This document shows positions 42,976-62,831 of a stretch of 64,000 bases of DNA, piece after piece. The notes under the pieces are model-generated. The model was not told where the DNA came from, searched no databases, and saw only the letters and a list, made by a program, of their open reading frames with translations. Position 1 is the first letter of the stretch, and every line of letters starts with the position of its first letter. The DNA comes from Sminthopsis crassicaudata (taxonomy: Eukaryota). The translations under genes were made by a program, and so were the position numbers. The stretch covers positions 35,590,852 through 35,654,851 of the forward strand of contig NC_133620.1 in the NCBI RefSeq assembly GCF_048593235.1, given 5' to 3'.

Positions 42976-44459
42976 AAGGGATTGATGTGTACATCATTTA
43001 CACTACACCTAGAAGTGAACTTGGAAGAAACTTTTGGAAAGGAAGTAAAGGACTCCCATGACTAAGATGCACTGCTTGAGCACACATGTTCCAGTTCTTC
43101 TTGCTCCAAGTTTTAGTGTCCTCTCTATAGTGACTTTAATCATGTTTAGGATAGAAAATGTCTTGTACTCATCACTGTTTNNNNNNNNNNNNNNNNNNNN
43201 NNNNNNNNNNNNNNNNNNNNNNNNNNNNNNNNNNNNNNNNNNNNNNNNNNNNNNNNNNNNNNNNNNNNNNNNNNNNNNNNNNNNNNNNNNNNNNNNNNNN
43301 NNNNNNNNNNNNNNNNNNNNATGATATATTCTCAGTAAATAGCCTTGTGTAAAAGCTAGCTGAGATTAATTACTTAATTGATATTGGGGAAATATTACTG
43401 ATTGACCTATATTGGGATGTGTGGAGGGAAGAGGATATGGATGGTATAAGGTATGTGAGAAGAAAGAAGAAGGTTTGTACTTGTCCTATCTGGGAATTTG
43501 GGAGAGAGTTGTAGAATCATATATTTCAAGCTGAAAGAGATCTTAGGAATATTAGTGAGTTCAATTCCCTAATTTAACAACTGAAGAAATTGAAGTCTAA
43601 GGAGTTTAAATGAATTCACAAGATCTATTGTTTAAAAAGTTTGATTTTTCCTGAATCCAGGTCTAATAGTCCATTCACAATAAAAACAACAGAAATTATC
43701 ATTATAATAGCTAAAACTTATATAGGGCCTACTATGTGTCAGGTTAAACACTTTATGAATATTGTTTTGAATTCCTGCCTTCCTGATTTCAGGATTCATC
43801 TCAGATCTTTCTAACTCCCAGTCTGATACCATATCCACTACACTGCTTTCTCGCTCAATGTTTGCCTAGAAATAGTGAAATCTAGGTGAAATTAAAGAAA
43901 ATGAATTTGTAGTTTGTTATTTAATTGACCAAACTGGGCCTATTGAGTGACTTCCTTTAGCAGTCCAAGAATCTTACAATCTTTTGATCTTATGATCAGT
44001 GATATAACTGACCTAAGGTTGAGGACTGGTTGACAAGAGGACTGAGGAAGACAAAGGATTCAGGCGGGGAGGAAATCATTAAATTGGTTAATTATAAGGT
44101 CAACCTCATAAAGGAGGAAACTGATGTGAAAGCAGGGATGATGGTCAACAGGGACTAGCGAGATAGGGATAAAGCAGATGACCAAGTGCAAACAACAGAA
44201 GGAAGTAAACAAGCACTTATTAAACTCTTACTATGTGCCAGGCATTGTTCTGAGAAATTTATAAATGCCATCTCATGTTAGCCTTACCATTATAGCACTG
44301 GTAGATACATGTCATTATCATTCCTCTTTAATGGTTGAAGAAACTGAAGTAAATAGAAGTTGAAATGACTTACCCAGACTCACACAGCTAGTCTGAATTA
44401 GAATTTGTACTCAAATCCTCCTAACTCCAGGCCCAGTGCTGTATTTACTGTGCCATCTA

Positions 44460-45720
44460 GCTGTCCTGAAGATACTTTTTAAGAGGAATATAATGGTGGG
44501 AGATCAAATAAGAGAAGATTATGATCATATAATAATATTTCAGAATTTAAGATTATTGAGAAAGTATATTGGATACTGGCAAAGTCCCAGAGGGCTTCTG
44601 TAGATGGTTGAATAGAGTAGAAATATAAATTATAGAATTCACATGATTGATAAACTGGAAAGTCAGAGTATTTAAAAGAATATCACAGTGAATATACTGA
44701 ATCCCCAAGTAGGAAAGACAGAGATTGGTGGAAAAGATGACCGTGACACAAGTACTGTGTTCTCCAGGAAAGGAGCGAAAGTGAGTTGACTATAATGAAG
44801 ATCTGAACAAGGAGATAGAGCTAAATGGAGTGAACCTCTTAAAAATGGATAAGGTGCTGAATTTCTCTGATATCAGAGCAGAGGAGTCTGGGATTGACAA
44901 TGGGAAACATTGAAGGTGCTTACCTTAGTGCAAGCTGGGGAAGTTGGTCAAAGATGATATGTATCCCAAAGAAAGCTAGCTTTCCCTCAAAGCACAAAAT
45001 TTGCAAGAGTCTGAAATGGAAGAGCTCAGATGACAATATAGCCAGGATCAGTCAGGCAATAAACATTTATTAAGCACTAATTATGTGTTAAGCAGTATTC
45101 TAAGCTGGGATTCAAAAAGAGACAAAAGACAGTTCTTGCTTTGAAGAAGATTGCAATCTAATGGGGGGAAACCAGTAGACAAATATGTACAAATAAATTA
45201 TATATGAGATATATAGGAAAAAGTAAGAGAAGGTTTTTGAATTGAGAGGTTGGAAAAGGTTATCTGTGAAGATAAGATTTTAGTTGAGACTTAAAAGAAG
45301 CCAGAGGAGTCAGTGGGTGAAGATGAGGAGGGAGAGCATTCCAGGCATGGGGGGATATCCGAGAAATGACCATACTCTAAGATGAAGTATATGGTTTGTG
45401 TGGCAAGGAGGCCAGTTTCACTGAACCAGAGTTCTCAGTGAAGAGTAAAATAAAAGATTTAAAAATAGGAAGAGGCTAGGCTATGTAGGGCTTTAAATTT
45501 GATCCTGGAAGTGATAGAGAACCACTTGAGCTTATTGACTGGGGACTAGCAGCATGGATGAACCTGTCCTTTAGGAAAATCACTTTACTGACTGAATGGA
45601 AGTTGGATTAGAGTGGGGACATATTAAAGACAAGCAGGAAAAACTAGGAGTATTGGAAAAGTCCAGGTGTGAAATAATGAGGGTCTGCACCAGAGTGATG
45701 ATAGAGAAGAGGGACATAAT
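44460..45720 (-). mobile_element. L2 LINE remnants (internal region and 3' tail)
   Basis: Reverse L2 tail aaacatttattaagcactaattatgtg at 45060, followed by purine-rich L2-like internal sequence. Confidence 0.6.
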
Positions 45721-45794
45721 TCATTAACCATACAACAGGTCTTGTAGATTTGATTTAGATTGGATTTATCTGGTATTTATCTCAGCTAATGTAA

Positions 45795-46030
45795 TATTGT
45801 TTAGTCTCTGGATCTAGAGTCGGGAAGGCCTGAATTCAAATCTAGCCTCTGACACTATCCAAGTGACCCTGGGCAGGTCACATAATCTCTGTTTGCTTCT
45901 GTTGTAAAATGGAGGTAATAAAAGCACCTAGCTCCCAGATATTTTGTGAGGATCAAATGAAATAATATTTGAAAAGTACATAGCACAGTACCTGGCACAA
46001 TGAAGATGCTATATAAATTGATAATGATAG
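45795..46030 (+). mobile_element. MIR-family SINE
   Basis: cctgaattcaaatctagcctctgacact...gtgaccctgggcaggtcac...tgtaaaatggaggtaataaaagcacc. Confidence 0.8.
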
Positions 46031-47024
46031 TGACTACTAAAGTAGTGCTGTATGGGCTAGGTAGAAGTAAATATGACTTTTCACTTCACATCTACTTGGA
46101 ATTTAGGAATAGTGAGCTCTATGAGAAAGATATCCTGGTGCCCTGTTTCAAGTGTAGAGTTTCCGTCACCAGGGGAAGTTTAGCAGTTTGTGACATTGTC
46201 AATCAGTTAATCAATCAGCAAATGCTTATTGATCTCCTACTGCGTAGCAGGCACCTTGCTAAGCTCTGTAGGGGGTTAAAATAAGTATTCCCAGCCTCTG
46301 TGCTTAAGGAGCTAATAATTGAGATGAATTTTACATTAATTTCACCCTTCACTCATTTATTTGTGGCTCTGCCATGGAAAACAGAAACAAAGAATTCCAG
46401 TGACAAATATTTTTTGCCCTGTGTTCAAAATTCACTTCCTCCGGCGAGTATTGTTTAGATATTATAGCTCCATAGACTTCTCCATTCCCTTGGATTACAT
46501 TGGTACTTCCATATTCATTGTTATATATGTACTTTTGTTGCTGCATAGAAGGCAGTATTGAATGAGAAAGGATCTTAGAAATCAGCTGTCCTAATCTTTT
46601 CATTTTAGAGAAGAAGCAGCTTCAGCCTTAGAAAAAAATCCTAAAGAACCCTAAGAGGTTTGATGATTTCTTATAAAGTCACACTAGCAATTTGTGCCAG
46701 AACAAGGACATGAAACAGAAATTCTGCCCCCCAAGCTAATACTCCATCATACCTTATAGTTGTATCTATTTTTTATTCCCTCCAAGTAGTAAGCACTCCC
46801 AGGCAGAGCAAATGCAACATCAGCAGTTTTTCTGTGTGCTCTACCTTTAGTCCCACCCTTACCCTCATCCCCATGCCTTTTATTCACTAACATCTCTTCC
46901 TGGGGTCTACTACCTTTCCTTTCCCCACCATACAGCTTAGTTTTAAAGCAAATATTTTTTATTTTCCCCTGGGCCTATTTCCAGAGAACAATCCCATAGT
47001 TTATATTAAGGTTTGCTCTTACAG

Positions 47025-47180
47025 GGCAAAAAGACAGGGGAAATACAATAGCAAACAGAACGGGGAAAATGATAAGTTACCCAAGTATTGGCCATTCGGA
47101 CATACCTGTTTCCAATGCAGGAAATTCTGGTGGTGACTGGGAGCTGTCCGCAGCTGAAGAAGAGTTTTTGAAGGAACAAG
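47025..47180 (+). CDS. Candidate 156-nt phase-1/phase-1 coding exon (QKDRGNTIANRTGKMISYPSIGHSDIPVSNAGNSGGDWELSAAEEEFLKEQ)
   Basis: tttgctcttacag acceptor, CAAG|GTTAGG donor, length divisible by 3, one frame open end to end. Protein not recognised. Confidence 0.4.
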
Positions 47181-49324
47181 GTTAGGAAATGATTGAAGAC
47201 CTTCCAACACCTGTACATTATTGACTAACCATGGCTACATTTTGGCACAAATTCATTTTACTCTGGGTCAGATTCATGCAGGGTTAAAGGTTCTCCTATC
47301 TTTACTCAATCCATTGCAGGGTATAGTGGGTTGGAGGCTTCTTTGAGCACAGATTTTTTTATCCAGAGAGTTGCATTTGCCTCTTTCCTTTGTGATGAAG
47401 CTGCCTTCTCTGTCCTACTGTTCTACCTGGACACCCAACCCTCTCTCGTTTCTAGAGACCATATGGTCCTAGGAGGCTAAATTTGTAATTTTCCCTGGTC
47501 ATCCTCTTTAATCCCATATTTTCCATACTTGCTATTGGTTCAGGGCCTCCTCTGAAAATGGTATATATCGATTTTTTTGGGTGTAATTATTCACTCTGCT
47601 TTCTTGGCTTTCTGCTGCTTAGATGATTACACCACCTAAATGCCATTAGTTAATACAAATCATGCTCTTTTTTTTTTTTAAACAATGTGTAATCCTAGAG
47701 AGTTCTCCAAAGTCTTGAATAGCTGAATGAGTCACAGTCAATATATTATCAAATTCTGACCTTGTACCCTGGTTCTCTTGGCCTTCATATTCACTTTCTA
47801 TGTACTGTTCCCTGTTGCTTCTTGGTTCAAACCTGAGCCATTGAATTCTACTGGCTGTAAACATACAATGTCTAAAATCAAAAGTCTAAGTTTTGACTCT
47901 AAATTTTGCCCTTTCTCTATGGTTTTCTTCTACTAAATACCTATCCAATCGTATTTACTTACTTGATATGAAATCAGAGAATATATGAAAAGTAATCCTG
48001 GATTGAAATACATAAACTGTAATATCCACAAGGCCAGGGAGTAGGTCTTATTAAAACATTTTATTTTGTCTCTACTTAGAGCAATGCTCTCTACTCAGTA
48101 TGTATTTAACAAATGCTTGTTGATGAGTACAAGGAGCATTTCCTCTGCTAGTATAGTAATCAACTATACAACTAACATTACAGTTATTTGGGATAAACCT
48201 CTTTCTTTGTATCAGACTATGAAGATGCCACTGAACTTGGGTGATGGATCCTGAGATTGTTGGGAAACACATGGTTGCTTATAGTGGTTAGTTATACTCT
48301 AGTTGTTTATGAAGATGCCGATGCTGTTTTTGGGGGTTAGTAACTTGGTGGAAATGGATCCCTAGGTATGGTAAAAAGGAACAAGGACAGAAATCTCATA
48401 ATTGATGGTGGTTCAAGAGAGCCAACCCTTCCTATAAGGAAAGAGCATGAGAATGTCTGGGAATTTAGCCTGGGAGAATTATGTGTGGAGGCTGACAGAG
48501 CGATTGTGTGTGTGAACTAGGGTTAGAGGTTTAAGTAATAGAGCATATTGTTGGGGGCAAAGGCAGGAATTTTGTGGAGTGAGATCTGGGCTGTGTTTTG
48601 GATTCTAATGTCTCCTTGGCATATCAAAATCAGTACTGAGAAAAGATGAATGCCCATCAACTAGATTCACACTTAATGTGAGCTATCTCCATGAGCATTA
48701 TTGAATTTCTAGTGTCTGAAAGGCAAAAGAGACTGATCTGAGCAGGAAAGGAAATGAGGGAAGTTGAGCAAGCTTGGGATGTAGGTCATATCTGTTTGAA
48801 TATGTATCAGTAACCCTTAACTGTAGAGGTAGTGACAGGCATGTGTGGGCTGGGATTCAAGACAACTGAATTCTATTTCCTACAGTACTACTATTACCAA
48901 TTACTAATAAATACTAATAAGTAGTACTTTAAGATTTATAAAACTTTAGAAATATTATCTCATGTTTATCATTATAACAGCCTTGGAAGGTAGGTGCTAT
49001 TTTTATCCCTTTTTCCCAGTGAAGAGACTGAAATATATCCCATGATGACATTTTGATAAGTAATTTGTTCAGGATCACACAGATTGGAAGAGGTTGAGGT
49101 TGATTTGAAATCAGGTCTTCGTGAGTCCCAATCTTATGCTCTCTATATGGTGCCATCTTATTATACTTCTGTATGATCGTGGACAAATTATTTTTTCTCT
49201 CTGAGACTCTGTTTCCTGATATGTAAAATATGGGAAAAGGACTTGGTGATTTAGTTCCAAGTCTGTTCTCATGAAAACTGTTCAGGAAGATAATGATAAA
49301 AAAGAAAGACCCTTTACATTCCAA

Positions 49325-49700
49325 AATATTCATAATAGCATTATTTATAGTAACAAAGAATTAGGGGAAAAGTAGATGTCCTTTAGGGAATGGCTAAACA
49401 AATTATAGTACATGGATGTAATGTGAAAAGATAATAAATATGATGAATACAGAGAAACATGGAAAAGCTGATGTGAATTGTTTTGATGTGAGTGAGCAAA
49501 ATCGGGGAAAAACAATACATATAATGACAACAACAATGAAAAAGAAAACAACAAACAAATGGAAATTAAATACCATGAAATTATAATGACTAAATGTGAC
49601 CCCAAAGAAGAGAGATGGTAAATCACCTACTTCTTTCTTTATAGAAATAGGGAGCTATAGATATGGAATATTAGCTATAATGCCAAATTTTCTTCCTCTG
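49325..49700 (+). mobile_element. Old degraded L1 3' fragment
   Basis: atattcatagcattatttatagtaacaaag...gaatggctaaacaaattatagtacatg matches the ORF2 end. Confidence 0.65.
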
Positions 49701-49899
49701 TGGATTAGTTACTTACCTTCTTGCATTCCACCCCCACCATAAATCTCCCCATTGTCATTCTTTATGATTAGTGCAGAGCTTGGCATATAGTAAATATTTA
49801 ATTGTTGACTATTCACTTGGTCATAATTGATAGCTTTTGGGGAAAGGGAAGGAGAAATGTAGATGAAATAAAATCAATGGGTTTTAATAAATAACTGGT

Positions 49900-50145
49900 T
49901 GGTACAGTAGATGGAATCCTGAAACTGTAGTTAAGAAGACCTGAGTTTAAATCTAGTTCAAATCAAATCAAATCAAAATTGGGCAAGTCCCATAACTCCT
50001 GTCTGCCTCAGTTTCCTTCTTTGTAAAATGGAGATAATAATAACACTTACCTCCCAAGATTGTTGTGAGGCTAAAAGGAAGCAATATTCCTAAAGTACTT
50101 TGTAAACTTTAAATTGCTACGTAAACATTGGTTGTTATTATTGTC
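49900..50145 (+). mobile_element. MIR-family SINE immediately upstream of the L1 insertion site
   Basis: agaagacctgagttt...gggcaagtc...gcctcagtttcc...tgtaaaatggagataataataacacttacctc. Confidence 0.8.
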
Positions 50146-50148
50146 AAT

Positions 50149-50159
50149 GAAAATTTATT
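50149..50159 (+). repeat. 5' copy of the L1 target-site duplication (GAAAATTTATT)
   Basis: Identical 11-mer directly follows the poly(A) tail at 56640-56650. Confidence 0.92.
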
Positions 50160-50161
50160 GG

Positions 50162-50182
50162 ACTTCCGGCCAAGATGGCGGC
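50162..50182 (+). promoter_or_regulatory. L1 internal promoter start: ETS site (ACTTCCGG) next to YY1 site (CAAGATGGCGGC)
   Basis: Exact motif matches in the first about 25 nt of the element. A YY1 site at this position is characteristic of mammalian L1 5' ends. Confidence 0.8.
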
Positions 50183-50781
50183 GTGGAGGCAGACAGCTGC
50201 TTGAGCTCCTCGTTTTCTCTCAGAACTTACTTCATGACAAGCCTCTGACTTAATGCTTGACCCAGAAAGAAATCCACAAATTATTACCAAGAGAAGACAT
50301 CCTTGAAAGTCGCCAGAAAAGGTCTGTGTTTGTTCGGGGGAGGGTCAATCAGACTGGGCGCAGACTGAGGGCAGACAGCCAGAGCAAGACAGGCAGCTCA
50401 CACAGCTCAGACCAGAGGGGGAGGGGTGTGATCTCTGCCGTTCCTGTGAAAGGGCTTTTGCCCCAGTGTGGATGCTCCGTCTTGGCAGCAAGCCAGGAGC
50501 GGTGGAGAGGGTGTAAACACCGAGGTGAAGATTAAAACCCCAGAAAGCCAGCATCTCTCAGAACCCGGCCAACCCCAACCCCCACCTGGACTGACTCGGT
50601 GCGTTCTCAGAGCCTCAGAGCGCAGACTCAGTACAGTCATTGCTGTTCTGTTAGTGGCTCTCTGCTGCCCTACCCCCAGTCTGTAGAGGAAGCCCATTAA
50701 CACCATCCAGCCCCATCCCCCCCAAAACAGACCAATTGTTTCTCTTGTCAGTTTGTTTTCTTTGATTCCTGCTCTGACAAA

Positions 50782-51957
50782 ATGAACAAAAAATTCAAAA
50801 GGGCTCTAACCATTGACAGCTTCTGTGTGGAGAGGGAGCAAACTTCAAATGCTGAAGAGACTAGGAACAGAATGTCCCCAGATGTATCCCCTGGGAGGGA
50901 TATAAGCTGCTCCTCAATACAAAAGAACCTCATAGAGGAAATCAAAAAGGCTCTCACAAGAGAGCTGGAAGAGAAATGGGAAAAGGAAAGGGAGGCTTGG
51001 CAAGAGAGCCTGGAGAGGTCATCCCATGCATTCAAAGACAGAATGGATAAAGAAATCAAATCATTGAGAAACAAGATTAGTGAGCTGGAAAAGGTAAACA
51101 ACTCCAAGGAAAACAGGATTAGTGAGCTGGAAAAGGTAAACAACTCCAAGGAAAACAGGATTAGAGAGCTGGAAAAAGAAATCAGCTCTCTAAAAAATAA
51201 AATGGATAAAATGGAAAAAAATTCCATAGAAGATAAAAACTCAATTGGACAATTACAAAGAGATATAAAAAAAGTGAGTGAAGAAAATACATCATTGAAA
51301 ATTAGACTGGAACAAGTAGAAATGAATGACTCAAGGAGAAACCAAGAGGGAGTCAAGCAAAACCAGAGAAATGAAACAATTGAAAAGACTGTCAAGTACC
51401 TTACCAGAAAGACAACAGACCTGGAAAACAGATCCAGGAGAGACAATTTGAGAATAATCGGACTCCCTGAAAAATGGGAGGAAAAAAAGAGCTTGGACGC
51501 CATTTTCGAGGAAATTATCAAAGAGAACTGCCCAGACATTCTGGAAACAGAGGGTAAAATAGACATTGAGAAAATTCATCGATCACCTACTGAAAGGGAC
51601 CCTAAAATCAAAACGCCAAGAAATATAGTGGCCAAGTTCAAGAACCATCAGACAAAGGAAAAGATATTGGAAGCTGCTAGAAAAAAACAATTCAGATATG
51701 GAGGATCCACAATAAGGATAACACAGGATCTAGCAGCGTCCACATTAAAAGAACGCAGGGCCTGGAACATGATATTCCGAAAGGCTAAGGAACTTGGTAT
51801 GCAGCCAAGAATAACTTACCCAGCAAGAATGAGCATCGTTTTCCAGGGAAGAAGATGGACATTTAACGAAATAAATGAATTCCATCTATTTTTGATGAAA
51901 AAACCAGACCTACATAAAAGGTTTGATCTTCAAATACAGAACTCAAGAGACTTCTAA
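50782..51957 (+). CDS. L1-ORF1: LINE-1 ORF1p (391 aa; coiled coil, RRM and C-terminal domain; RNA-binding chaperone)
   Basis: E/K-rich coiled coil, then typical L1 ORF1 motifs DLENRSRRDNLRIIGLPE, IHRSP..PRNIVAKF, KEKILEAARKK, RITQDL and YPARMSI. Confidence 0.97.
   Translation: MNKKFKRALTIDSFCVEREQTSNAEETRNRMSPDVSPGRDISCSSIQKNLIEEIKKALTRELEEKWEKEREAWQESLERSSHAFKDRMDKEIKSLRNKISELEKVNNSKENRISELEKVNNSKENRIRELEKEISSLKNKMDKMEKNSIEDKNSIGQLQRDIKKVSEENTSLKIRLEQVEMNDSRRNQEGVKQNQRNETIEKTVKYLTRKTTDLENRSRRDNLRIIGLPEKWEEKKSLDAIFEEIIKENCPDILETEGKIDIEKIHRSPTERDPKIKTPRNIVAKFKNHQTKEKILEAARKKQFRYGGSTIRITQDLAASTLKERRAWNMIFRKAKELGMQPRITYPARMSIVFQGRRWTFNEINEFHLFLMKKPDLHKRFDLQIQNSRDF
51076..51177 (+). repeat. In-frame 42-bp tandem repeat (about 2.4 copies) in the ORF1 coiled coil
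   Basis: ATTAGTGAGCTGGAAAAGGTAAACAACTCCAAGGAAAACAGG at 51076 and 51118, partial third copy at 51160. Encodes ISELEKVNNSKENR twice, then IRELEK. Confidence 0.95.
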
Positions 51958-52409
51958 AAAAAGTAAAAAGAAATCTTGAGAACTATACTTCTGTCAAAAA
52001 AATATGTAAAGAACATATGTACAATTTGTCTTAGAAACTAGAGATGGAAAGGAGATTATATCATAAAGTATAAAGTGGTGGTACTACATCTCATGAAGAG
52101 GCAAAGGTAACCTATTATATCTGAGAGAAAGAAAGGAGGGAGATGAAAATAGCGTGTATCAATAGACATATTCGATTTATGGTGAAACTTCTTCCATTTC
52201 ATTGAAAAGTGAAAGGGAAGGAGTAAGCTAAGGGGAAGGGAATACAGTAATTTCGAGGAAAAGGGATAAAATAAGGGGAGGATCTTTAAGGTGGGGGAGG
52301 GATCCTAAAAAGGGAGGGCTGTGAAAAGCAAGTGGTGTTTACCAGTTGAATACTGGATAGGAGGGTAAAAGGGAAGGAAAGGGGAAAAGCATAAGCAGGG
52401 GTTAATAGG

Positions 52410-55400
52410 ATGGCAAGCAATATAGAATTAGTCCTTCTAACCATAAATGTGAATGGGGCAAACTGCCTCATAAAGAGGAAGCAGTTAGCAGACTGGATTA
52501 AAAGTCAGAATCCTACTATATGTTGTTTACAGGAAACACACCTGAAACAGGATGAGACATTCAAACTAAAAGTAAAAGGGTGGAGCAGAATCTATTATGC
52601 TTCAGGTAAAACCAAAAAAGCAGGAGTAGCCATCCTCATCTCAGATCAAGCAAAAACAAAAATTGATCTAATTAAAAGAGATAAGGAAGGGCATTATATC
52701 CTGCTAAAGGGAAGCATCAATAGTGAAGCAGTATCAATATTAAACATGTATGCACCAAGTGGTGCAGCATCTAAATTCTTAAAAGAGAAATTAAGAGAGC
52801 TGCAAGAGGAAATAGATAGCAAAACTATAATAGCGGGAGATCTCAACCTTGCACTCTCAGAATTAGATAAATCAAACCACAAAATAAATAAGAAAGAAGT
52901 CAAAGAGGTAAATAGAATACTAGAAAAGTTTGATATGATAGATCTTTGGCGAAAGCTAAATGGAGACAGAAAGGAATATACTTTCTTCTCAGCAGTTCAT
53001 GGAACCTATACAAAAATTGATCATATACTAGGGCATAAAAACCTCAAAATCAAATGCAGTAAGGCAGAAATAGTAAATGCATCCTTTTCAGACCATAATG
53101 CAATCAAAATAACATTTAATAAAAAGCCAGGGGAAAATAGACCAAAAAATAATTGGAAACTAAATAATCTTATACTAAAGAATGATTGGGTAAAACAGCA
53201 AATCATAGACATAATTAATAACTTCACCCAAGAAAATGACAATAATGAGACATCATACCAAAATGTGTGGGATACAGCCAAAGCAGTAATTAGGGGAAGT
53301 TTTATATCTCTACAGGCCTACTTGCATAAAGTAGAGAAAGAGAGGGCCAACGAATTGGGTTTACAACTAAAATTGCTAGAAAAGGAACAAATTAAAAACC
53401 CCCAGACAAACACAAAACTTGAAATTCAAAAAATAAAAGGTGAGATTAATAAAATTGAAAGTAAAAAAACTATTGAATTAATTAATAAAACTAAGAGTTG
53501 GTTTTATGAAAAAACCAACAAAATAGACAAACCCTTAGTAAACCTGATTAAAAAAAGGAAAGAGAAAAAGCAAATTGATAGTCTTGAAAATGAAAAGGGT
53601 GAACTCACCACTAATGAAGAGGAAATTAGAACAATAGTTAGGAGCTACTTTGCTCAACTTTATGCCGATAAATTCGATAACTTAAATGAAATGGAAGAAT
53701 ACCTTCAAAAATATAGCTTGCCCAGATTAACAGAGGAAGAAGTAAGTAGTCTAAATAGTCCCATCTCAGAAAAAGAAATAGACCAAGCTATTAACCAACT
53801 TCCTAAGAAAAAGTCCCCAGGACCAGATGGATTTACAGGTGAATTCTACCAAACATTTAAAGAACAACTAACTCCAATGCTATGTAAACTATTTGAAAAA
53901 ATAGGGATTGAAGGAGTACTACCAAATTCCTTCTATGACACAGACATGGTACTGATACCTAAACCAGGTAGATCAAAAACTGAGAAAGAAAACTATAGAC
54001 CAATTTCCTTAATGAATATTGATGCTAAAATCTTAAATAAGATTTTAGCAAATAGACTTCAGAAAATCATCCCCAGGATAATACACTATGACCAAGTGGG
54101 ATTTATACCAGGAATGCAGGGCTGGTTTAATACTAGGAAAACTATTAGTATAATTGACCATATTAATAATCAAATTAATAAAAACCATATGATCATCTCA
54201 ATAGATGCAGAAAAGGCATTTGATAAAATCCAACATCCATTCCTACTAAAAACGCTTGAGAGTATAGGAATAAATGGACTATTCCTTAAAATAATAAGGA
54301 GCATATATTTAAAACCTTCAGTAAACATCATATGTAATGGTGATAAACTAGAACCTTTCCCTGTAAGATCAGGAGTGAAACAAGGTTGCCCACTATCACC
54401 ATTACTATTCAATATAGTACTAGAAACTCTAGCCTTGGCAATAAGAGCCGAGAAAGAGATCCAAGGAATTAGAGTAGGAAATGAAGAAATCAAATTGTCA
54501 CTTTTCGCAGATGACATGATGGTATACTTAGAGAACCCCAAAGACTCTGCTAAAAAGCTATTAGAAATAATTCAGAATTTTAGCAAAGTCGCAGGATACA
54601 AAATAAATCCACATAAATCCTCAGGATTTTTATACATTACCAACACAATCCAACAGCAAGAGATACAAAGAGAAATTCCATTCAAAATAACAGTCGATAG
54701 TATCAAATATTTGGGAATATATCTACCAAAGGAGAGTCAGGAATTATATGAGCAAAATTACAAAACACTTGCCACAAAAATAAAGTCAGATTTAAATAAT
54801 TGGAAAGACATTCAATGTTCTTGGATAGGCCGAGCGAATATAATAAAGATGACAATACTCCCCAAACTAATCTATTTATTTAGTGCTATACCAATCAGAC
54901 TCCCAAGAAACTATTTTAATGACCTAGAAAAAATAACAACAAAATTCATATGGAAGAATAAAACGTCGAGAATTGCAAGGGAACTAATGAAAAAAAAGTC
55001 AGAGGAAGGTGGTCTAAGTGTACCTGATTTAAAGCTATATTATAAAGCAACAGTCACCAAAACCATTTGGTATTGGCTAAGAAATAGACTAGTTGATCAG
55101 TGGCATAGGTTAGGTTCACAGGACAAGATAGTGAATAAAAATAGCAATCTAATTTTTGACAAACCCAAAGATCCCAAATTTTGGGATAAGAATTCATTAT
55201 TTGACAAAAACTGCTGGGAAAACTGGAAATTAGTATGGCAGAAACTAGGCATGGACCCACATTTAACACCACATACTAAGATTAGATCAAAATGGGTCCA
55301 AGATTTAGGCATAAAGAACGAAATCATAAATAAATTGGAGGAACATGGGATGGTTTACCTCTCAGACTTGTGGAGGAGGAAGGAGTTTGTGTCCAAGGGA

Positions 55401-56243
55401 GAACTAGAGACCATTATTGATCACAAAATAGAACATTTTGATTACACCAAATTAAAAAGTTTCTGCACAAACAAAACTAATGCAAACAAGATTAGAAGGG
55501 AAGTAACAAATTGGGAAAAAATTTTTACAGTTAAAGGTTCTGATAAAGGCCTCATCTCCAAAATATACAGAGAATTGACTTTAATTTATAAGAAATCAAG
55601 CCATTCTCCAATTGATAAATGGTCAAAGGATATGAACAGACAATTTTCAGATGATGAAATTAAAACTATTTCCACTCATATGAAAGAGTGTTCCAAATCA
55701 CTATTGATCAGAGAAATGCAAATTAAGACAACTCTGAGGTATCATTACACACCTGTCAGATTGGCTAAAATGACAGGAACAAATAACGATGAATGTTGGA
55801 GGGGTTGTGGGAAAACTGGGACACTGATGCATTGTTGGTGGAGTTGTGAAAGAATCCAACCATTCTGGAGAGCAATCTGGAATTATGCCCAAAAAGTTAT
55901 CAAAATGTGCATACCCTTTGACCCAGCCATACTACTACTGGGCTTATACCCCAAGGAACTACTAGAGAAGGGAAAGGGTCCTGTATGTGCCAAAATGTTT
56001 GTGGCAGCCCTTTTCATAGTGGCTAGAAGCTGGAAGATGAATGGATGTCCATCAATTGGAGAATGGTTGGGTAAACTATGGTATATGAATGTTATGGAAT
56101 ATTACTGTTCTATAAGAAATGACCAACAGGAGAAATACAGAGAGGCTTGGAGAGACTTACATCAACTGATGCTGAGTGAAACGAGCAGAACCAGAAGATC
56201 ATTATACACTTCAACAATGATACTGTACGAGGATGTATGCTGA
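52410..56243 (+). CDS. L1-ORF2: LINE-1 ORF2p (1277 aa; APE-like endonuclease, reverse transcriptase, C-terminal Cys-rich domain)
   Basis: EN motifs TINVNG, LQETH, AGDLN, IDHI and [12 protein letters not shown] and YRPISLMN are present. RT motifs [14 protein letters not shown] and FADDM. CCHC motif CWRGC..HCWWSC. No stops or frameshifts. Confidence 0.98.
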
Positions 56244-56603
56244 TGGAAGTGGATTTCTTCAACATAGAGAAGAGCCAATCCAATTCCAATTGATTAATGA
56301 TGGACAGAACCAGCTACATCCAGAAAAGGACTGGGAAATGAATGTAAACTGTTATTTTTACCTTCTGAATCCAATTCTTCCTGTGCAACAAAAAATTCGG
56401 TTCTACACACATATATTGTATCTAAATTATACTGTAATATATTTAACATATATAAGACTGCTTGCCATCTGGGGGAGGGGGTTGGGGGAGGAAGGGAAAA
56501 AATCTGAATAGAAGTAAGTGCAAGGGATAATGTTGTAAAAAATTACCCATGCATATGTACTGTCAAAAAATGTTATAATTATAAAATAAAATAAAAAAAT
56601 TTA

Positions 56604-56639
<36 letters not shown>

Positions 56640-56641
<2 letters not shown>

Positions 56642-56650
56642 AAATTTATT
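56640..56650 (+). repeat. 3' copy of the L1 target-site duplication (GAAAATTTATT)
   Basis: Identical to 50149-50159. Confidence 0.92.
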
Positions 56651-57709
56651 TAAAATATATTTTAAAATATAACCTTTCTCTCCATTTTAAGGGAGGTGAA
56701 AAATCAAATAGTTTGAATGCAGAAAAAAAGGCATCAAATTCGAATGTTTCAAATAAGATAATAAGTATCCTCCTGAAGAAACAAACTCCTTTCCTCTTAG
56801 GATCAGTTGTGTTCAGTCAAGACCTCAGGGCAAGTCCCCCAAGCCAGCCCTCCTGTGAGGTCTCACCTTTATCTTTTCAGCAGAGGAGTGGGCAAATGCA
56901 ATTTTTCTATGACAGATCAGCTCCATTTTCCCTTTTGAAGTGGCTATTGATATTCATTGGCCTGTTAGAGCAAAGCTATTCTTCTTAAGCTTGATAAAAT
57001 CATTAGGGTAAAGGCATATATATTGTACCAAAGAACTTCCATCCTGTTGCACACTATGAGTGAGTCTGGAACTAATGATTTTTCTTGGCCTTTGCATTCA
57101 TCTTTTAGCTTGCTTTATAGTGGAACGGTCTGTCCCGGGATGATGTTTTGTTGGTCTACAGGGCCTGTTAAAGTGACTTTATAGAGCTATAGGCCATAAG
57201 GTGATATTTTATGAGAACATAAGGGTTTTCTCAAATATGTATTCTTCTCTCTGTTATCTGAAAGTCTGGATTGTTTGTAAATAGACTAACTCATAGTGTG
57301 GCAGTAGTTGTGGGTGATGTCACCTACAATATGGCACTTGGGCAAATGGAAATTGTAGTTCCCATGAAAAAAATCACATGGAACTAAATGGTGTGCCATT
57401 GTGTGCCTGAGAAAGTTAGCCAAAGATGCATTTTCACAAAGGGAAAAGTGGGATGTTGGAACCTTGTCAATAACATACTACGTTTGTTCTCTTGTTTTAG
57501 TTGATCTCTCTTGTTAGAGAATCCTGGATAGATGTCAATGATTTTCTTAAATGATATAAAACTTTGTACATACTTGGAAATGAAAGCTAACTGTACATGT
57601 TATTACTATGTTAAAAATCGTGGCTGCTTGGTATAATTGTATACTTCCAAGAGTAAGAAATGATTTCTAGAGTGACTGCTGAGAGGCTTTGAAACATTAC
57701 CCTTTGCAG

Positions 57710-57804
57710 ATGGAATAGCAAATGAGATGTTGACAGAGGCCAATATGGATCTGGAGGCCTTAGGGCGGATTGCAGTCAAATTATTATTGTCCGATGAAGA
57801 GTAA
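57710..57804 (+). CDS. Candidate exon (D)GIANEMLTEANMDLEALGRIAVKLLLSDEE*
   Basis: taccctttgcag acceptor; the phase-1 frame is open for 30 codons up to TAA. An alternative weak donor AGA|GTAAAA lies at 57800. Confidence 0.3.
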
Positions 57805-58009
57805 AAACAATAGTTGGCTATATACAGATCACTTATTCTTCTGATTGGCCCCATGGGGCAGAACTGAGAGCAATGAGAAAAGTTGCAACAAAGAAGATAG
57901 ACTTGCTATTAGGAGGGAAAAAAAAGCTCTAATAATTTGGATTGTACAAAAGCTGGATAGGCTGCCTGTGGAACTTGTAGGGGCATTCCCCCATTGGAAG
58001 GATCAAAAG

Positions 58010-58270
58010 AAAGAAGTTAGGAAAGAAGGATAGAAAAAAGGAAGAAAATTAGGACAAAAGGAAGGAAGAAAGAAAGGAAAGAAGGAAGTCAAGAGAGTAG
58101 GAAAGAAGGAAGAAATGAAGGAATGCAACAAAGATGGAAGAAAGGAGGGAAGGAGGAAGATTAAAAAGAATGAAAGAAATTAGAATGGAAGAAAGAAAAG
58201 ATTGATCAGCAAGCATTTAGGATGGAAGGGATAAAGTAAGGAATAAAGGAAAGGAGGAAGGGAAGAAGGC
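58010..58270 (+). repeat. Purine-rich (GGAA/GAAA)n degenerate tract
   Basis: Almost exclusively G/A. Confidence 0.85.
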
Positions 58271-60150
58271 TGGACAGAGGATGCTCTGTGTTTGTGTCCT
58301 GTTCTTTAGACTAAAAGGAATCAGAATAAAGAGAGATACTCCACAGGGTCTGGTGTAATAAACACACTCCCACTCTCAATGGTATTGCTCCTCATTCTAC
58401 ATTCAGATGCAAATCTCAGTGGCAAACATAAAGAATGCTTTCTGAGGCCGAAACAAATTTGTATGTATTTGGGGGAAAAACACCCTAAGGACTTCTAGAT
58501 CTTTTTCCTACCTTCCAGTATTCACTTCCTTTTATGATTATTTCCTGTGATTTATTTTTAAAGGATGTAGTTTCAATAAAGTTTCCAAAGTACTCTGAGT
58601 TCCAAATGGACTTGAGTTCATTTGATTTTTATGGGCGGCTAGCCTTTAATCTCTTATCACAGAATCAGAAATGTACCTGTTCCATACTGGTAAATTANNN
58701 NNNNNNNNNNNNNNNNNNNNNNNNNNNNNNNNNNNNNNNNNNNNNNNNNNNNNNNNNNNNNNNNNNNNNNNNNNNNNNNNNNNNNNNNNNNNNNNNNNNN
58801 NNNNNNNNNNNNNNNNNNNNNNNNNNNNNNNNNNNNNNNNNNNNNNNNNNNNNNNNNNNNNNNNNNNNNNNNNNNNNAAAGNNNNNNNNNNNNNNNNNNN
58901 NNNNNNNNNNNNNNNNNNNNNNNNNNNNNNNNNNNNNNNNNNNNNNNNNNNNNNNNNNNNNNNNNNNNNNNNNNNNNNNNNNNNNNNNNNNNNNNNNNNN
59001 NNNNNNNNNNNNNNNNNNNNNNNNNNNNNNNNNNNNNNNNNNNNNNNNNNNNNNNNNNNNNNNNNNNNNNNNNNNNNNNNNNNNNNNNNNNNNNNNNNNN
59101 NNNNNNNNNNNNNNNNNNNNNNNNNNNNNNNNNNNNNNNNNNNNNNNNNAATTAACATCAATATGCTGTTTGGTCCTTTATTAAAAATTCCCATAGGATA
59201 ACCAACACAGATGTTCAATGCAACATCATATATCTGCGGCATTTTATGGCTCCACTAATTGGCCATATGGAAAGGTGTTGCTTGGATGTAATTTTTAAAA
59301 AAAAATCTGCTAAATTATATGAATTGTAATAATTATAATCAGTTTATATATAAAGTTGGATAGGTTAATACAGGCTGCCTGTTGCAAGCAAAATAGGAGT
59401 AAACAAACTTTTGGTGCTATGTTTTGTTATAAATACCAGTTTACTTAAACATGTGCACATTAGCTCCAACAGCATTTTAAGTTCCTATTGTAATTATGAG
59501 TAATTTTAACTTTTGCCTATAGCCTAAAGAGATTATATGCTTTTGAGTTCTAGAAGCAGTAGTGTTCTTTAGGGTACCTGCTGTGAGGACTTCAACAGGA
59601 TGCACTTTTTTCATGTGTGTTCTGAAATTTTATATTAATAGTAAGTGTCCAGGATTTGGTTATTGTCATTTGTCCTTTTTGCCTGATAATAAAAATGGGG
59701 TCTTGTTAATTTCCCATGTTAATTTCTCTTGCTGTCAAAATAGAATAATGTACTTAAAGCTTCATATATTTTACTTTCTTCACATGACACATACTTTTCC
59801 TTCTTGTCACATTTTGTCTTTTTTTCACCTTTCATATTATCAGCATATATTTTATATTCATGAAATAACAATTACATATGCTCGAGTCATCCAGGGGGGG
59901 AGGGAGGGTGATAGATCAAGAGCTGGAATAGAAATCAGAAAGCTTTTTGTTTAAGCCTTGTTTGTGACCATACCTACTGTTTGGTCTTGGGCAAATACTG
60001 TAATTTCTCAGTGACCCATGCAGCCAGGGATGTAATTTAAGGGCAGATGGGGATATGCATGAAGGAGGTCTCACCTTATAGAGATGAAATTTTGGATCTA
60101 CTCCTTTTCTACTTTACTAAAATAGATACATTTATTAAAGATTAAAGATT

Positions 60151-60335
60151 TACTTGTTTAGTTGTGAGTAACCCATTTGGGCTTTTCTTGGCAAAGATCC
60201 TGAAGAGTTTTGCCATCCTATTATCCAGCTCATTTTACAGATGAGGAAAGTAAAGCAAACAGGGTTAAGTGACTTGCTCAAAGTCACATAGTTAATATCC
60301 AAGGCCTGATTTGGCTCAGGTCTTCTCAAGTCGGA
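60151..60335 (-). mobile_element. MAR1-like CORE-SINE
   Basis: ttttcttggcaaagat...cagctcattttacagatgaggaaa...gttaagtgacttgc. Confidence 0.75.
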
Positions 60336-61216
60336 CTTAGGTGACTCTTTATTAAAAGTCAGGAATATAGTATATCTAATAGCTAGCATTAGATATATTA
60401 TTAAGTGTACACTTTTTGCTGATTTGTTACCTTTTCCTCCTGGCACTCAGATCACCTCTTTTTATCATAGAATTGAATTCTTCTTTCTCTGTCTCCTCCT
60501 CAGGTGGCAGTTAGACCTCTGTTCCTCCCAGATTCCCTATCACATCTCTCTCCTTCCACAGAAGAGTCCTTTTTGTCTCACAGGCTTGTTATACATTGAT
60601 ATTCTGCCAGATAAAGCTACTTATCTGATTTTTGCTCTAGAAATTCGGGCAGTCTGAAGTAATTTACCTCTTTGTTCTCATGGTTATTTCTTTTTTTTTT
60701 TTTTTCATTTTTCTTTGTCTCTGTCTGATTCTCCCTTTCTTTCCCCCTTCCCTTGATCTTCCCCTTTCTCCTGTGTTCTGTGTATATGATGAAAACAGAT
60801 AATGAGACGGAGCATGAACTGTTCCCTACCATACCTTATTATATATTGCCTAGTTCTAATATATTTTAACTGTATGGACACAGATTCTACTGTTTTTCAC
60901 AAGTCCAAGGTAGAAGTAAAGTCAAGATGAGCCTCAAACTCTAAGACAAATGGAACACTCTGGAAATCCATCAAAGAGGATGAGGCTGGGCTGTGGAGAC
61001 ATTACTGAAGACTTTTCTCTTTCCTTTTCCATTTTGAACCAGTGTAGAATTTTCTACAATCATAGTATCTTGCATATAGAATGGTACAAGCTTCCTTTTG
61101 GCTGTTGTCTCCCTGCAGTAGATTGTCATCTCCTTCTGGTCCTATTTGGATTCTCAGTGTATAGCACATAAATACTTGTTGATTGGCTTGAGTGGAATAG
61201 ATTTCATTGATTTCTA

Positions 61217-61276
61217 TGATTTCAACTCCCATTGAAGAAACTACCATTGATTTCAACTCCTATTGAAGAAACTACC
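61217..61276 (+). repeat. 31-bp-period tandem duplication
   Basis: tgatttcaactcc(c/t)attgaagaaactacc occurs twice with one mismatch. Confidence 0.9.
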
Positions 61277-61344
61277 TCTTCCAAGGCAGATTGGCACCTT
61301 CTTTGAAACCTGCAGACTTATAATTTCAAACCACTTGTGATGGA

Positions 61345-61615
61345 AATAGCCATTTGCATCCAGAGAGAGAACTATGGAGACTAAATGTGGATCAAAACAT
61401 AGTGTTTTCACTTTGTTGTTATTTGTTTGTTTGCTTGTTTGCTTGCTTGTTTTTTCCCTCATGAAACATTTATGTTTAGAAGAATATTGGATTGCTTGCT
61501 GTTTATGGCAAAGGGTAGGGAGGAGGGAGAAAAACTTGGAACATAAGGTTTTACAAAGGTGAATGGTGAAAACTATCTTTGTATGTTTTTGAAAAAATAA
61601 AAATCAATTAAAAAG
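61345..61615 (+). mobile_element. L1 3'UTR fragment
   Basis: catccagagagagaactatggag... is also present in the L1 fragment at 6600-6630; ends in an A-rich tail. Confidence 0.75.
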
Positions 61616-62795
61616 GAAATCTGAGCTTTAGAAAATTGTTTGGGGCACTGAGAGTTTAAGGGATTTACCCAGTTTTCACATATCACTATGTATGAAGTGG
61701 GACTTGTACCCCGGTCTCCTCCTCATTCAATGACCATACTGCCTATCTGCTTTGCACATAGTAGGCACTTAATAATAAGTATTTGTGAAATTGAATGGAC
61801 TTATTCATGTTCAGACTTAGTTTTGTGTGGTATTTATCTACACATCTCCCATTTCTCCCAAACAAGATGGCAAGTTATCTATGGACTATGTATAATTCAT
61901 CTTTGTATCTCTCTTCTTCCCCCAAATTCTACCACTCTGCTTTGAACATAGTACATACTCAATTAAACTTTGGTGAATTTAATTAAGATTTGAGGAATTC
62001 TGGTACAGTGGAAAGAAAGGTGGATTCAGAATCAGAAAACCTTGGCTACTTGTTACTTGTATAATTGCCAGAGGTCACCTTCCATCTGTGGGTATCAATG
62101 AAAGGATTGGACTAGATGGCCTCTAGTTTCTCCATCTAGCTCTAAATCTATGATCCTATGATTTTATCACTTCTTTTAATGACCTTGAAGTTCACCTTTC
62201 TCCTTCATTTCTTATGAGTCACTTTATTTCCATTGGGCAAAATGAGCTCCTCTGAATAAGAGCAAAAGAAGCTACTTCAGTGACATGAAGATCCATGTCA
62301 TTATGCTACAGTTATTTTTTTGTCTTGTTATATTAGAGATGAGACACTCCAAAATAGATTTTTAATATTCTCTACAAATGATTGTTGAGCTGAAGCCCAT
62401 TTCCCATCTATAACTAAGAAGTAGCAGGAATTGATAGATCAGAATTTTGTCTCCTTTCCTCATGGCATCGTGGATCAATGCCTAGCCTTGGGTTAAGTAT
62501 TTTCTCTGGGCTCATATGCTACTTCTGACCTATACTAGCTGTCACACCATAGGCAAATCACTTAATGTCTCATTGCCTGAGGCATCTCTCTAGTTGCTGG
62601 TCTGCATGGGCAGAGATGATAGTTTTATTGGGATTTCCCTCTCCTGATGAAATGACAAGTATAGATCTGAGAAAAAATGGCCCATGTTGACCACAAAAAG
62701 GCACATGTTGAATACATGTCACCTTTGGATTTAGCAATTAGCTAATAAATCATTGGCATTTAAACCTAAAGAATTTAACAACCTGGTACCACTCC

Positions 62796-62831
<36 letters not shown>

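What the first reader, a model, noticed from the sequence alone, without database searches (positions are those of the whole stretch)
50149..56650. Intact, probably retrotransposition-competent marsupial L1 with perfect TSD and uninterrupted 31-A tail
Seen: both ORFs are open, the catalytic motifs (LQETH, GDLN, IDH, SDH, FADD, CCHC) are present, the YY1-bearing 5' end is complete, the poly(A) is pure and the TSD identical. The reconstructed empty site caat|gaaaatttatt fits L1 endonuclease cleavage (bottom strand TTTTC/A, a variant of TTTT/A). Known: intact L1s are rare per genome. As I recall, L1 activity in dasyurids has been debated (reported near-silent in the early devil assembly, later implicated in somatic insertions in a devil transmissible tumour). 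Inference: a very recent, possibly polymorphic source element.
Basis: partly seen in the sequence, partly recalled or inferred. Interest (0 to 1): 0.75.

Follow-up and report, generated by a model that had tools for sequence, protein, structure and literature searches.

The report
Intact young L1 retrotransposon in dunnart
This is a complete, recently inserted copy of the ordinary mammalian jumping gene LINE-1 in the fat-tailed dunnart, with both genes unbroken; it matters mainly because an earlier PCR survey suggested that dunnarts and their relatives had almost no working LINE-1 left.

Summary
Window 50160-56639 (+) is a full-length 6,480-nt L1. It is flanked by an identical 11-bp target-site duplication (50149-59 and 56640-50) and ends in 31 uninterrupted A.

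ORF1 (391 aa) and ORF2 (1,277 aa) are both open. ORF2 aligns end to end with the solved human ORF2p, and all endonuclease, RT and CCHC motifs are present.

[quoted passage not shown] ORF1 is 98% identical to two dunnart RefSeq proteins and only 64-70% identical to devil ones.

Five other dunnart copies were fetched. The two closest are 98.3-98.6% identical, and both are broken or truncated with shorter tails. Four copies start at the same nucleotide.

The window copy's private changes are biased to non-coding and synonymous sites (omega about 0.28). Most of them therefore arose while its lineage was still replicating. Post-insertion decay is at most about 0.2% (95% upper bound 0.44%).

The copy is young and structurally competent. 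Activity, polymorphism and source status remain untested. One private change (R852T) hits a position that is K/R in 20 of 20 other L1s.

This is a known kind of element. Devil L1 competence was published in 2023, but I found nothing published on dunnart L1 activity.

The parts
50149..50159 (+). 5' copy of the 11-bp target-site duplication GAAAATTTATT
   Evidence: Identical to 56640-56650; flanking bases differ on both sides
50160..50781 (+). 5'UTR (622 nt, 53.5% GC, 15 CpG, o/e 0.34 against 0.10 in the flanks). Starts GGACTTCCGGCCAAGATGGCGGCG, with an ETS-type CCGGAAGT on the minus strand at 50162-50169 and a YY1 site at 50172-50182
   Evidence: The same first nucleotide is seen in L001, L002 and L004. 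A YY1 start motif is the rule for mammalian L1 (PMC5381506)
50782..51957 (+). ORF1 (391 aa): coiled coil, RRM (aa 220-316, nt 51439-51729) and CTD (aa 319-375, nt 51736-51906)
   Evidence: Open. Pfam PF02994 and PF17490. Aligns to human ORF1p structure 2yko at 5e-28. 98% identical to dunnart XP_074138411 and XP_074141155
51069..51176 (+). 42-nt tandem repeat (2.6 copies, 96% match) in the coiled coil. It gives a duplicated 14-aa block ISELEKVNNSKENR (aa 99-126)
   Evidence: TRF. The duplication is present only in the three youngest copies (window, L001, L005) and absent from the older copies P0122, P0123 and P0125
51958..52409 (+). 452-nt purine-rich inter-ORF spacer (IGR), with stops in all three frames
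   Evidence: Shared by all dunnart copies. Long IGRs of 423-719 nt are already described for opossum L1 (PMC5381506)
52410..56243 (+). ORF2 (1,277 aa): APE-type endonuclease (aa 10-229, nt 52437-53096), reverse transcriptase (aa 516-771, nt 53955-54722; FADD at 54504-54515) and a CCHC knuckle (aa 1129-1146, nt 55794-55847)
   Evidence: Open. Pfam. Aligns over residues 3-1264 to human ORF2p 8sxt residues 4-1264, E=0. Motif positions
56244..56608 (+). 3'UTR (365 nt) with a G-rich polypurine tract at about 56471-56503 and AATAAA at 56585-56590
56609..56639 (+). Poly(A) tail of 31 uninterrupted A
   Evidence: The older dunnart copies have roughly 9-14 A
56640..56650 (+). 3' copy of the target-site duplication

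Best explanation
[quoted passage not shown] It was inserted by target-primed reverse transcription. The ORF2 endonuclease nicked the bottom strand at TTTTC/A, the freed T-run primed on the poly(A) of a full-length L1 RNA, and a second-strand nick 11 bp away produced the duplication. The RNA started at the YY1-defined +1, so the copy carries its own promoter. Both proteins are structurally complete: ORF1p has a coiled coil, RRM and CTD, and ORF2p has EN, RT and CCHC domains. The copy therefore has what autonomous retrotransposition needs. What is shown: the anatomy, the host species, and that it is younger than the other copies compared. What is inferred: the insertion mechanism (from the known L1 pathway), an insertion age of at most about 0.5-2 Myr, and that the lineage was replicating until shortly before this insertion. 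Not shown: present-day activity of this copy, which I put at about 45%.
For: Anatomy and motifs.

Domains and end-to-end alignment with solved human ORF2p and ORF1p.

Host: the best ORF1 hits are S. crassicaudata RefSeq proteins at 98% identity, against 64-70% for devil and 44-60% for opossum. ORF2 is 91% identical to a devil fragment and 71% to opossum.

Family context in assembly GCA_048593235.1:
- L001 copy: full length, 98.6% identical, ORF2 broken by one stop and one 1-nt deletion, tail of about A14.
- L005 copy: element positions 47-3612, 98.3% identical.
- L002 94.4%, L003 95.3%, L004 92-96% identical.

Shared transcription start in four copies.

Polarised differences: there are 32 window-private substitutions. 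The rate is 0.90% in non-coding and 0.38% in coding sequence (P=0.016 for uniformity). In the ORFs, 11 are synonymous and 8 non-synonymous against a neutral expectation of 72% non-synonymous (P=0.006), giving omega 0.28. The dead L001 copy gives 0.48.

If the whole 0.85% neutral-class branch were post-insertion decay, the chance that 5 kb of ORF stayed open would be about 0.001.

Only 1 of the CpGs shared by L001 and L002 is lost here.

The tail (A31) is longer and purer than in all older copies.
Against: No sibling or offspring at 99% identity or more was seen, though only five other copies could be reached.

In the overlap with L005, the three young copies form a near-star with similar private counts (21, 25 and 21 in 3.6 kb). 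The raw branch length alone therefore does not make this copy younger.

The element was picked because it is intact, so the ORF-survival argument is biased by ascertainment.

The private R852T replaces a residue that is K/R in 20/20 other L1 ORF2 proteins. The private T240A replaces a T that is conserved in the dunnart, devil and human ORF1p sequences aligned.

The 5'UTR has only 15 CpG and may be methylated and silent. No expression, polymorphism or assay data are available.
Confidence: 0.85

Rival explanations
1. Intact in reading frame but functionally dead. The copy is young, but a private missense change (R852T in ORF2, T240A or K79R in ORF1) or epigenetic silencing of the 5'UTR prevents retrotransposition. 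This is the case for roughly half of intact human L1s in cell assays (from my own knowledge of Brouha et al. 2003, not checked here).
For: R852T lies at a position that is K/R in 20/20 other mammalian L1 ORF2 proteins. T240A lies in the RRM where the other dunnart and devil sequences and human have T. No near-identical offspring was seen among the copies fetched.
Against: All catalytic motifs are intact. I575T also occurs in the abundant dog/dingo L1 cluster. The private coding changes as a whole show purifying selection (omega 0.28), so most were carried by a replicating lineage.
Confidence: 0.4
2. The copy is no younger than its neighbours. It was inserted in the same burst as the L001 and L005 copies (about 0.6-0.85% divergence ago, 2-4 Myr), is fixed, and kept open ORFs by luck. 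It was noticed only because the scan looks for intact copies.
For: The three young copies form a star-like pattern with equal private counts. The selection of this copy is biased by ascertainment.
Against: P(intact) is about 0.001-0.016 for 0.5-0.85% neutral decay. There is a deficit of non-synonymous and coding changes (P=0.006 and 0.016). The tail is a pure A31 against about A14 in L001. The TSD is 11/11, and only one ancestral CpG is lost.
Confidence: 0.1
3. Assembly artefact: the open ORFs are a collapsed or polished consensus of several L1 copies rather than the sequence of this locus.
For: Nothing positive. Repeats are the classic place for such errors, and Gallus 2016 documented them in short-read devil assemblies.
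Against: The element has unique flanks joined by an exact TSD and contains no N. It carries about 32 variants not seen in the other copies, which a consensus would tend to erase. The related loci come from a chromosome-scale assembly with 657-757 Mb scaffolds.
Confidence: 0.03

Closest known systems
Tasmanian devil L1 (Repbase L1-1_SH; 1,948 full-length copies and at least 35 source elements active in DFT2; Stammnitz et al. 2023, PMC7614631)
   Same: Same host family (Dasyuridae) and same element architecture. Both were thought near-extinct from short-read and PCR data, and intact copies appeared once long-read assemblies existed.
   Different: Different species and L1 lineage. ORF1 is only 64-70% identical and ORF2 about 91%. 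The devil-derived forward PCR primer has 3 mismatches here. Activity is demonstrated for devil (somatic insertions with 3' transductions) but not for dunnart.
Opossum L1 (L1-1_MD; Gentles 2007; described in Boissinot & Sookdeo 2016, PMC5381506)
   Same: Bicistronic layout with an inter-ORF spacer several hundred nt long, a 5' end starting with the YY1 motif, and a GC- and CpG-enriched 5'UTR.
   Different: ORF2 is about 71-73% and ORF1 about 44-60% identical. This 5'UTR is shorter on CpG (15 against 31 reported for opossum). No long tandem repeat was found in the 5'UTR.
Human L1 (L1HS; ORF2p structures 8sxt, 8uw3, 8c8j; ORF1p 2yko)
   Same: ORF2 is collinear over 1,260 residues with every catalytic motif. 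ORF1 RRM and CTD align. Also shared: a YY1 site near +13, a G-rich 3'UTR tract, AATAAA, a poly(A) tail, and a 7-20 bp TSD at a T-rich nick site.
   Different: About 50% ORF2 identity, a 452-nt spacer against about 40-63 nt, an unrelated 5'UTR beyond the YY1 motif, and a different coiled coil with a 42-nt duplication.
Mouse L1 ORF1 length-polymorphism region (42-nt repeats in the coiled coil; from my own knowledge, not checked here)
   Same: A 42-nt (two-heptad) tandem duplication inside the ORF1 coiled coil distinguishes subfamilies.
   Different: Independent origin and unrelated sequence.

Membership tests
LINE-1 (L1 clade non-LTR retrotransposon, mammalian type) | ORF1p with coiled coil, RRM and C-terminal domain | tested here: met
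   Pfam PF02994 7.6e-13 and PF17490 6.4e-8. Aligns to 2yko, 2ldy and 2jrb. Heptad-rich N-terminal half.
LINE-1 (L1 clade non-LTR retrotransposon, mammalian type) | ORF2p with APE-type endonuclease, reverse transcriptase and a C-terminal CCHC motif, catalytic residues present | tested here: met
   Pfam PF03372 and PF00078. End-to-end alignment to human ORF2p, E=0. Motifs NVNG, QETH, GDLN, IDH, SDH, FADD and CX3CX7HX4C.
LINE-1 (L1 clade non-LTR retrotransposon, mammalian type) | Hallmarks of target-primed reverse transcription: 3' poly(A), polyadenylation signal, short TSD, T-rich nick site | tested here: met
   A31, AATAAA, an 11/11 TSD, and bottom-strand TTTTC/A, which is two departures from the TT/AAAA consensus read on the top strand. 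The consensus is from my own knowledge (Jurka 1997).
LINE-1 (L1 clade non-LTR retrotransposon, mammalian type) | 5' end begins with the G-rich/YY1 start motif (CAAGATGGC) at the transcription start | tested here: met
   CCAAGATGGCGGCG at +11 to +24. Four independent copies share the same first nucleotide. Consensus as given in PMC5381506. Promoter activity itself is not testable here.
Marsupial L1 lineage | Closest relatives are marsupial L1s; inter-ORF spacer several hundred nt long | tested here: met
   Identity ranks dunnart, then devil, then opossum or wallaby, then eutherians. Spacer is 452 nt.
Currently active (source) L1 subfamily | Near-identical sibling or offspring copies with different TSDs, or 3' transductions of the 56651+ flank | tested here: inconclusive
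   Only five other dunnart copies could be reached; the best are 98.6% and 98.3% identical. A whole-genome search is not possible with these tools.
Currently active (source) L1 subfamily | Purifying selection on the branch leading to the copy (lineage replicating until insertion) | tested here: met
   11 synonymous against 8 non-synonymous changes, omega 0.28, P=0.006. Coding rate 0.38% against non-coding 0.90%, P=0.016.
Currently active (source) L1 subfamily | Insertion polymorphism, transcription, and retrotransposition in an assay | not testable with these tools
   No population, read-level, RNA or experimental data are available here.

The most novel reading that the evidence does not exclude
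[quoted passage not shown] On this reading, the PCR-based conclusion that L1 was independently inactivated in each dasyuromorph lineage (Gallus et al. 2016: 2 of 100 intact fragments in this species) was partly a primer artefact. The devil-derived primers fit old copies that are 81-83% identical to this element better (1-2 mismatches) than the young dunnart lineage (3 mismatches).
Probability: 0.45. Interest if true: 0.5.

Novelty: new member of a known kind. Interest (0 to 1): 0.35.

Why it matters
The fat-tailed dunnart is being developed as the laboratory marsupial, with embryology, methylome, annotation and cell-line work under way. A live L1 there would be a source of germline and somatic mutation, and of SINE and retrocopy mobilisation. 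It would also give a natural marsupial system for studying L1 control.

The finding also bears on a published claim that Australian marsupials, dunnart included, had largely lost functional L1 (PMC5010896). For the devil that claim was overturned in 2023 (PMC7614631). This copy suggests the same correction for the dunnart.

In itself, one intact L1 in a mammalian genome is ordinary.

Tried and rejected
1. Antisense ORF of 272 aa across ORF1 (50748-51566, also 265 aa in L001). Rejected as a coding candidate: 9% of codon-order shuffles and 18% of synonymous shuffles give an antisense open stretch at least as long.

2. The long 452-nt spacer as something unusual. Rejected: long IGRs are already described for marsupial L1.

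3. Other near-identical copies inside the window. None; the other L1 fragments there are 68-79% identical.

4. Searches for dunnart ORF2 gene models to reach more young copies (full ORF2 and its first 400 aa). No dunnart hit. The exact ORF1 and ORF2 sequences are not in the protein collection.

5. A devil L1 locus for comparing architecture (P0124). Not on record.

6. Earlier scan notes by place or by sequence. Nothing near the element.

7. Rfam on 44000-64000. No family matched.

8. Host genes in the window. All long ORFs outside the L1 lie over N runs or are short; no gene was recognised.

9. TSD for the T29-tailed element at 62798-62826. None found.

10. Papers on dunnart L1 activity. None found beyond Gallus 2015/2016. 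The dunnart annotation and methylome papers do not discuss L1.
Full report
**The observation**

The element occupies window 50160-56639 on the + strand (6,480 nt). GAAAATTTATT occurs at 50149-50159 and again at 56640-56650. The bases outside both copies differ, so the 11-bp duplication is exact and its limits are unambiguous. The 3' end is a run of 31 A (56609-56639), preceded by AATAAA at 56585-56590 and by a G-rich polypurine tract at about 56471-56503.

Two long ORFs are open: ORF1 at 50782-51957 (391 aa) and ORF2 at 52410-56243 (1,277 aa). Pfam finds the L1 RRM and CTD domains in ORF1, and the APE-type endonuclease and reverse transcriptase in ORF2. ORF2 aligns without large gaps to residues 4-1264 of the solved human ORF2p (8sxt, E=0). 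ORF1 residues 171-379 align to human ORF1p (2yko).

**The host**

ORF1 evolves fast, which makes it a good species marker. The best matches are RefSeq proteins of Sminthopsis crassicaudata: XP_074138411 at 98% and XP_074141155 at 383/391 identical. Devil proteins reach only 64-70%, and opossum and wallaby 44-62%. ORF2 is 91% identical to a devil fragment and 71-73% to opossum.

Notes of other agents on the same genome also call it the fat-tailed dunnart. I treated that as a lead, and one search tests it independently.

**Other copies of the family**

Through the dunnart ORF1 gene models I fetched five loci of assembly GCA_048593235.1.

| Locus | Extent | Identity to window copy | State |
|---|---|---|---|
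| L001 7378-13836 | full length | 98.6% (1.23% substitutions) | ORF1 open; ORF2 interrupted by a stop at codon 332 and a 1-nt deletion near codon 861; tail of about 14 A; extra 22-nt repeat of its own 5' end |
| L005 | element positions 47-3612 | 98.3% | open 391-aa ORF1 |
| L002 | full length | 94.4% | many stops |
| L003 | 5' portion | 95.3% | partial or mosaic |
| L004 | mosaic | 92-96% | partial or mosaic |

The window copy, L001 (inner start), L002 and L004 all begin at the same nucleotide, G/AGACTTCCGGCCAAGATGGCGGCG. The 5' end is therefore the family's transcription start and is complete here.

The motif contains the YY1 consensus AAGATGGCGGC. It has one match in the 64 kb, with none expected by chance. 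It also contains an ETS-type CCGGAAGT on the other strand (28 of 100 shuffles give a match, so this is weak on its own). Boissinot and Sookdeo (PMC5381506) report that almost all mammalian L1s start with a G-rich stretch followed by CAAGATGGC, and that opossum L1 has an inter-ORF spacer of several hundred nt. Both the YY1 start and the 452-nt spacer (51958-52409) are thus normal for a marsupial L1.

**Age**

I used the older copies to polarise the differences between the window copy and L001. The window copy has 32 private substitutions and L001 has 39.

The window's private changes are not spread evenly. Thirteen lie in 1,439 non-coding nt (0.90%) and 19 in 5,004 coding nt (0.38%), with P=0.016 for uniformity. 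Within the ORFs, 11 are synonymous and 8 are not, whereas random mutation with the observed transition bias would make 72% non-synonymous (P=0.006). This gives omega of about 0.28, against 0.48 for the broken L001 copy.

Post-insertion decay is neutral. The non-synonymous rate gives an upper estimate of post-insertion divergence of 0.22%, with a 95% Poisson upper bound of 0.44%. That is roughly 0.5-2 Myr for neutral rates of 2.2-4.5e-9 per site per year. These are generic mammalian values from my own knowledge; the dunnart rate is unknown.

Independent indicators agree:
- If all 0.85% of neutral-class divergence were post-insertion, the chance of 5 kb staying free of stops and frameshifts would be about 0.001.
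- Only one of the CpGs shared by L001 and L002 has been lost.
- The tail is A31 and pure, against about 9-14 A in the other copies.
- The TSD is 11/11.

Against this, in the 3.6 kb shared with L005 the three young copies form a near-star with 21, 25 and 21 private changes. Raw divergence therefore does not single out this copy. The intact state was also the reason it was flagged, which biases the ORF-survival argument. I could reach only five other copies, and none is 99% identical or better.

**Competence**

Nothing structural is missing. Of the eight private replacements:
- L31M and V88M are shared with L005, so they belong to the lineage.
- I575T is also the residue in the large dog/dingo L1 cluster.
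- I308V and G905D lie in variable stretches.
- R852T replaces a residue that is K or R in all 20 other L1 ORF2 proteins aligned.
- T240A replaces a T kept in the dunnart, devil and human ORF1p sequences aligned.

Either of the last two could reduce activity. With no assay, I put the chance that this particular copy is active at about 45%.

**Relation to what is known**

Gallus et al. (PMC5010896) amplified a 612-nt ORF2 fragment with devil-derived primers. They found only 2 of 100 intact clones in this very species, with a mean distance of 0.148, and suggested independent final inactivation of L1 in each dasyuromorph lineage. They also warned that poor assemblies might hide survivors.

Stammnitz et al. 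(PMC7614631) then found 1,948 full-length L1s in the long-read devil assembly and at least 35 source elements active in the DFT2 tumour. Intact, competent dasyurid L1s are therefore already known.

For the dunnart I found no paper that addresses L1 activity. The forward primer of Gallus et al. has three mismatches to the window copy and to L001. It has only one or two mismatches to old L1 copies in L001 that are 81-83% identical to this element. Their screen probably favoured old copies. This is an inference, not a test.

First-stage notes on other windows of this genome mention further young L1s, TSD-flanked L1 derivatives and a retrocopy with a perfect TSD. They are unchecked, but they fit a recently active family.

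**Side observations in the element**

The ORF1 coiled coil contains a 42-nt tandem repeat (51069-51176, 2.6 copies). It duplicates a 14-aa block and is present only in the three youngest copies. This makes it a convenient marker of the young lineage.

The 272-aa antisense ORF over ORF1 is a by-product of composition.

**Verdict**

This is a real, complete, young L1 insertion in the fat-tailed dunnart, made by the standard L1 mechanism. It is structurally able to encode both proteins, and its lineage was under purifying selection until shortly before insertion. It is a new member of a known kind. Its interest is moderate and lies in the species rather than the element.

The breaks in other copies are only described.

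Noticed in passing
window 50748-51566 (-); L001 7988-8785 (-): A 272-aa (265-aa in L001) ATG-started ORF runs antisense across the end of the 5'UTR and most of ORF1. Shuffling ORF1 codons gives an equally long antisense open stretch in 9-18% of trials, so it looks like a by-product of the K/E-rich codon usage.
   Followed up: yes
window 51069-51176: A 42-nt tandem duplication (14 aa, two heptads) in the ORF1 coiled coil is present only in the three youngest dunnart copies (window, L001, L005) and absent in the 87-91% ORF1 relatives. It parallels the mouse L1 length-polymorphism region (the parallel is from my own knowledge).
   Followed up: partly
L001 7356-7399 and gene model 8001-72110: The 98.6% copy in L001 starts with a 22-nt direct repeat of its own first 22 nt. 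The RefSeq model LOC141551050 joins its ORF1 to sequence up to 64 kb downstream, which suggests a chimeric transcript or model starting in the L1.
   Followed up: no
window 54501-54521 and 55095-55115; L001 about 51247 and 53029 (-): The devil-derived ORF2 PCR primers of Gallus et al. 2016 fit old dunnart L1 copies (1-2 mismatches) better than the young lineage (3 mismatches in the forward primer). This could explain the low intact fraction they reported for this species.
   Followed up: partly
window 62798-62826: A pure T29 run, which would be the A29 tail of a minus-strand retroposed element, is followed by SINE-like sequence. I found no TSD within 1.2 kb, so its nature and age are open.
   Followed up: partly
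window 50000-50143: The L1 landed a few bases past the A/T-rich end of a CORE-SINE/MIR-like repeat (ctcagtttcc...gtaaaatgg motif). The identification is from my own knowledge and was not tested.
   Followed up: no
L003 7378-9684; L004 7377-14415; L005 7429-10994: L003 carries only the 5' 2.3 kb of an L1 (first 12 nt replaced, ending about 30 codons into ORF2), like the 'half-L1' noted elsewhere in this genome. L004 is an older mosaic copy that still has a perfect 11-bp TSD (acagcactacc). L005 is cut at both ends.
   Followed up: partly
proteins P0136 and P0312 (database hits): An L1 ORF1-like protein labelled Bacteroidales bacterium (MAG, 2.5-kb contig, 55% identity) and an L1 endonuclease-like protein labelled Sphingobium sp. 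AS12 (2.0-kb contig) are almost certainly mammalian host DNA contaminating bacterial assemblies.
   Followed up: no
window 8174-25269, 43181-43320, 58698-59149: Twelve N runs (3,197 N in all) lie outside the element. Most long 'ORFs' listed in the window merely run over them. They were left untouched.
   Followed up: no
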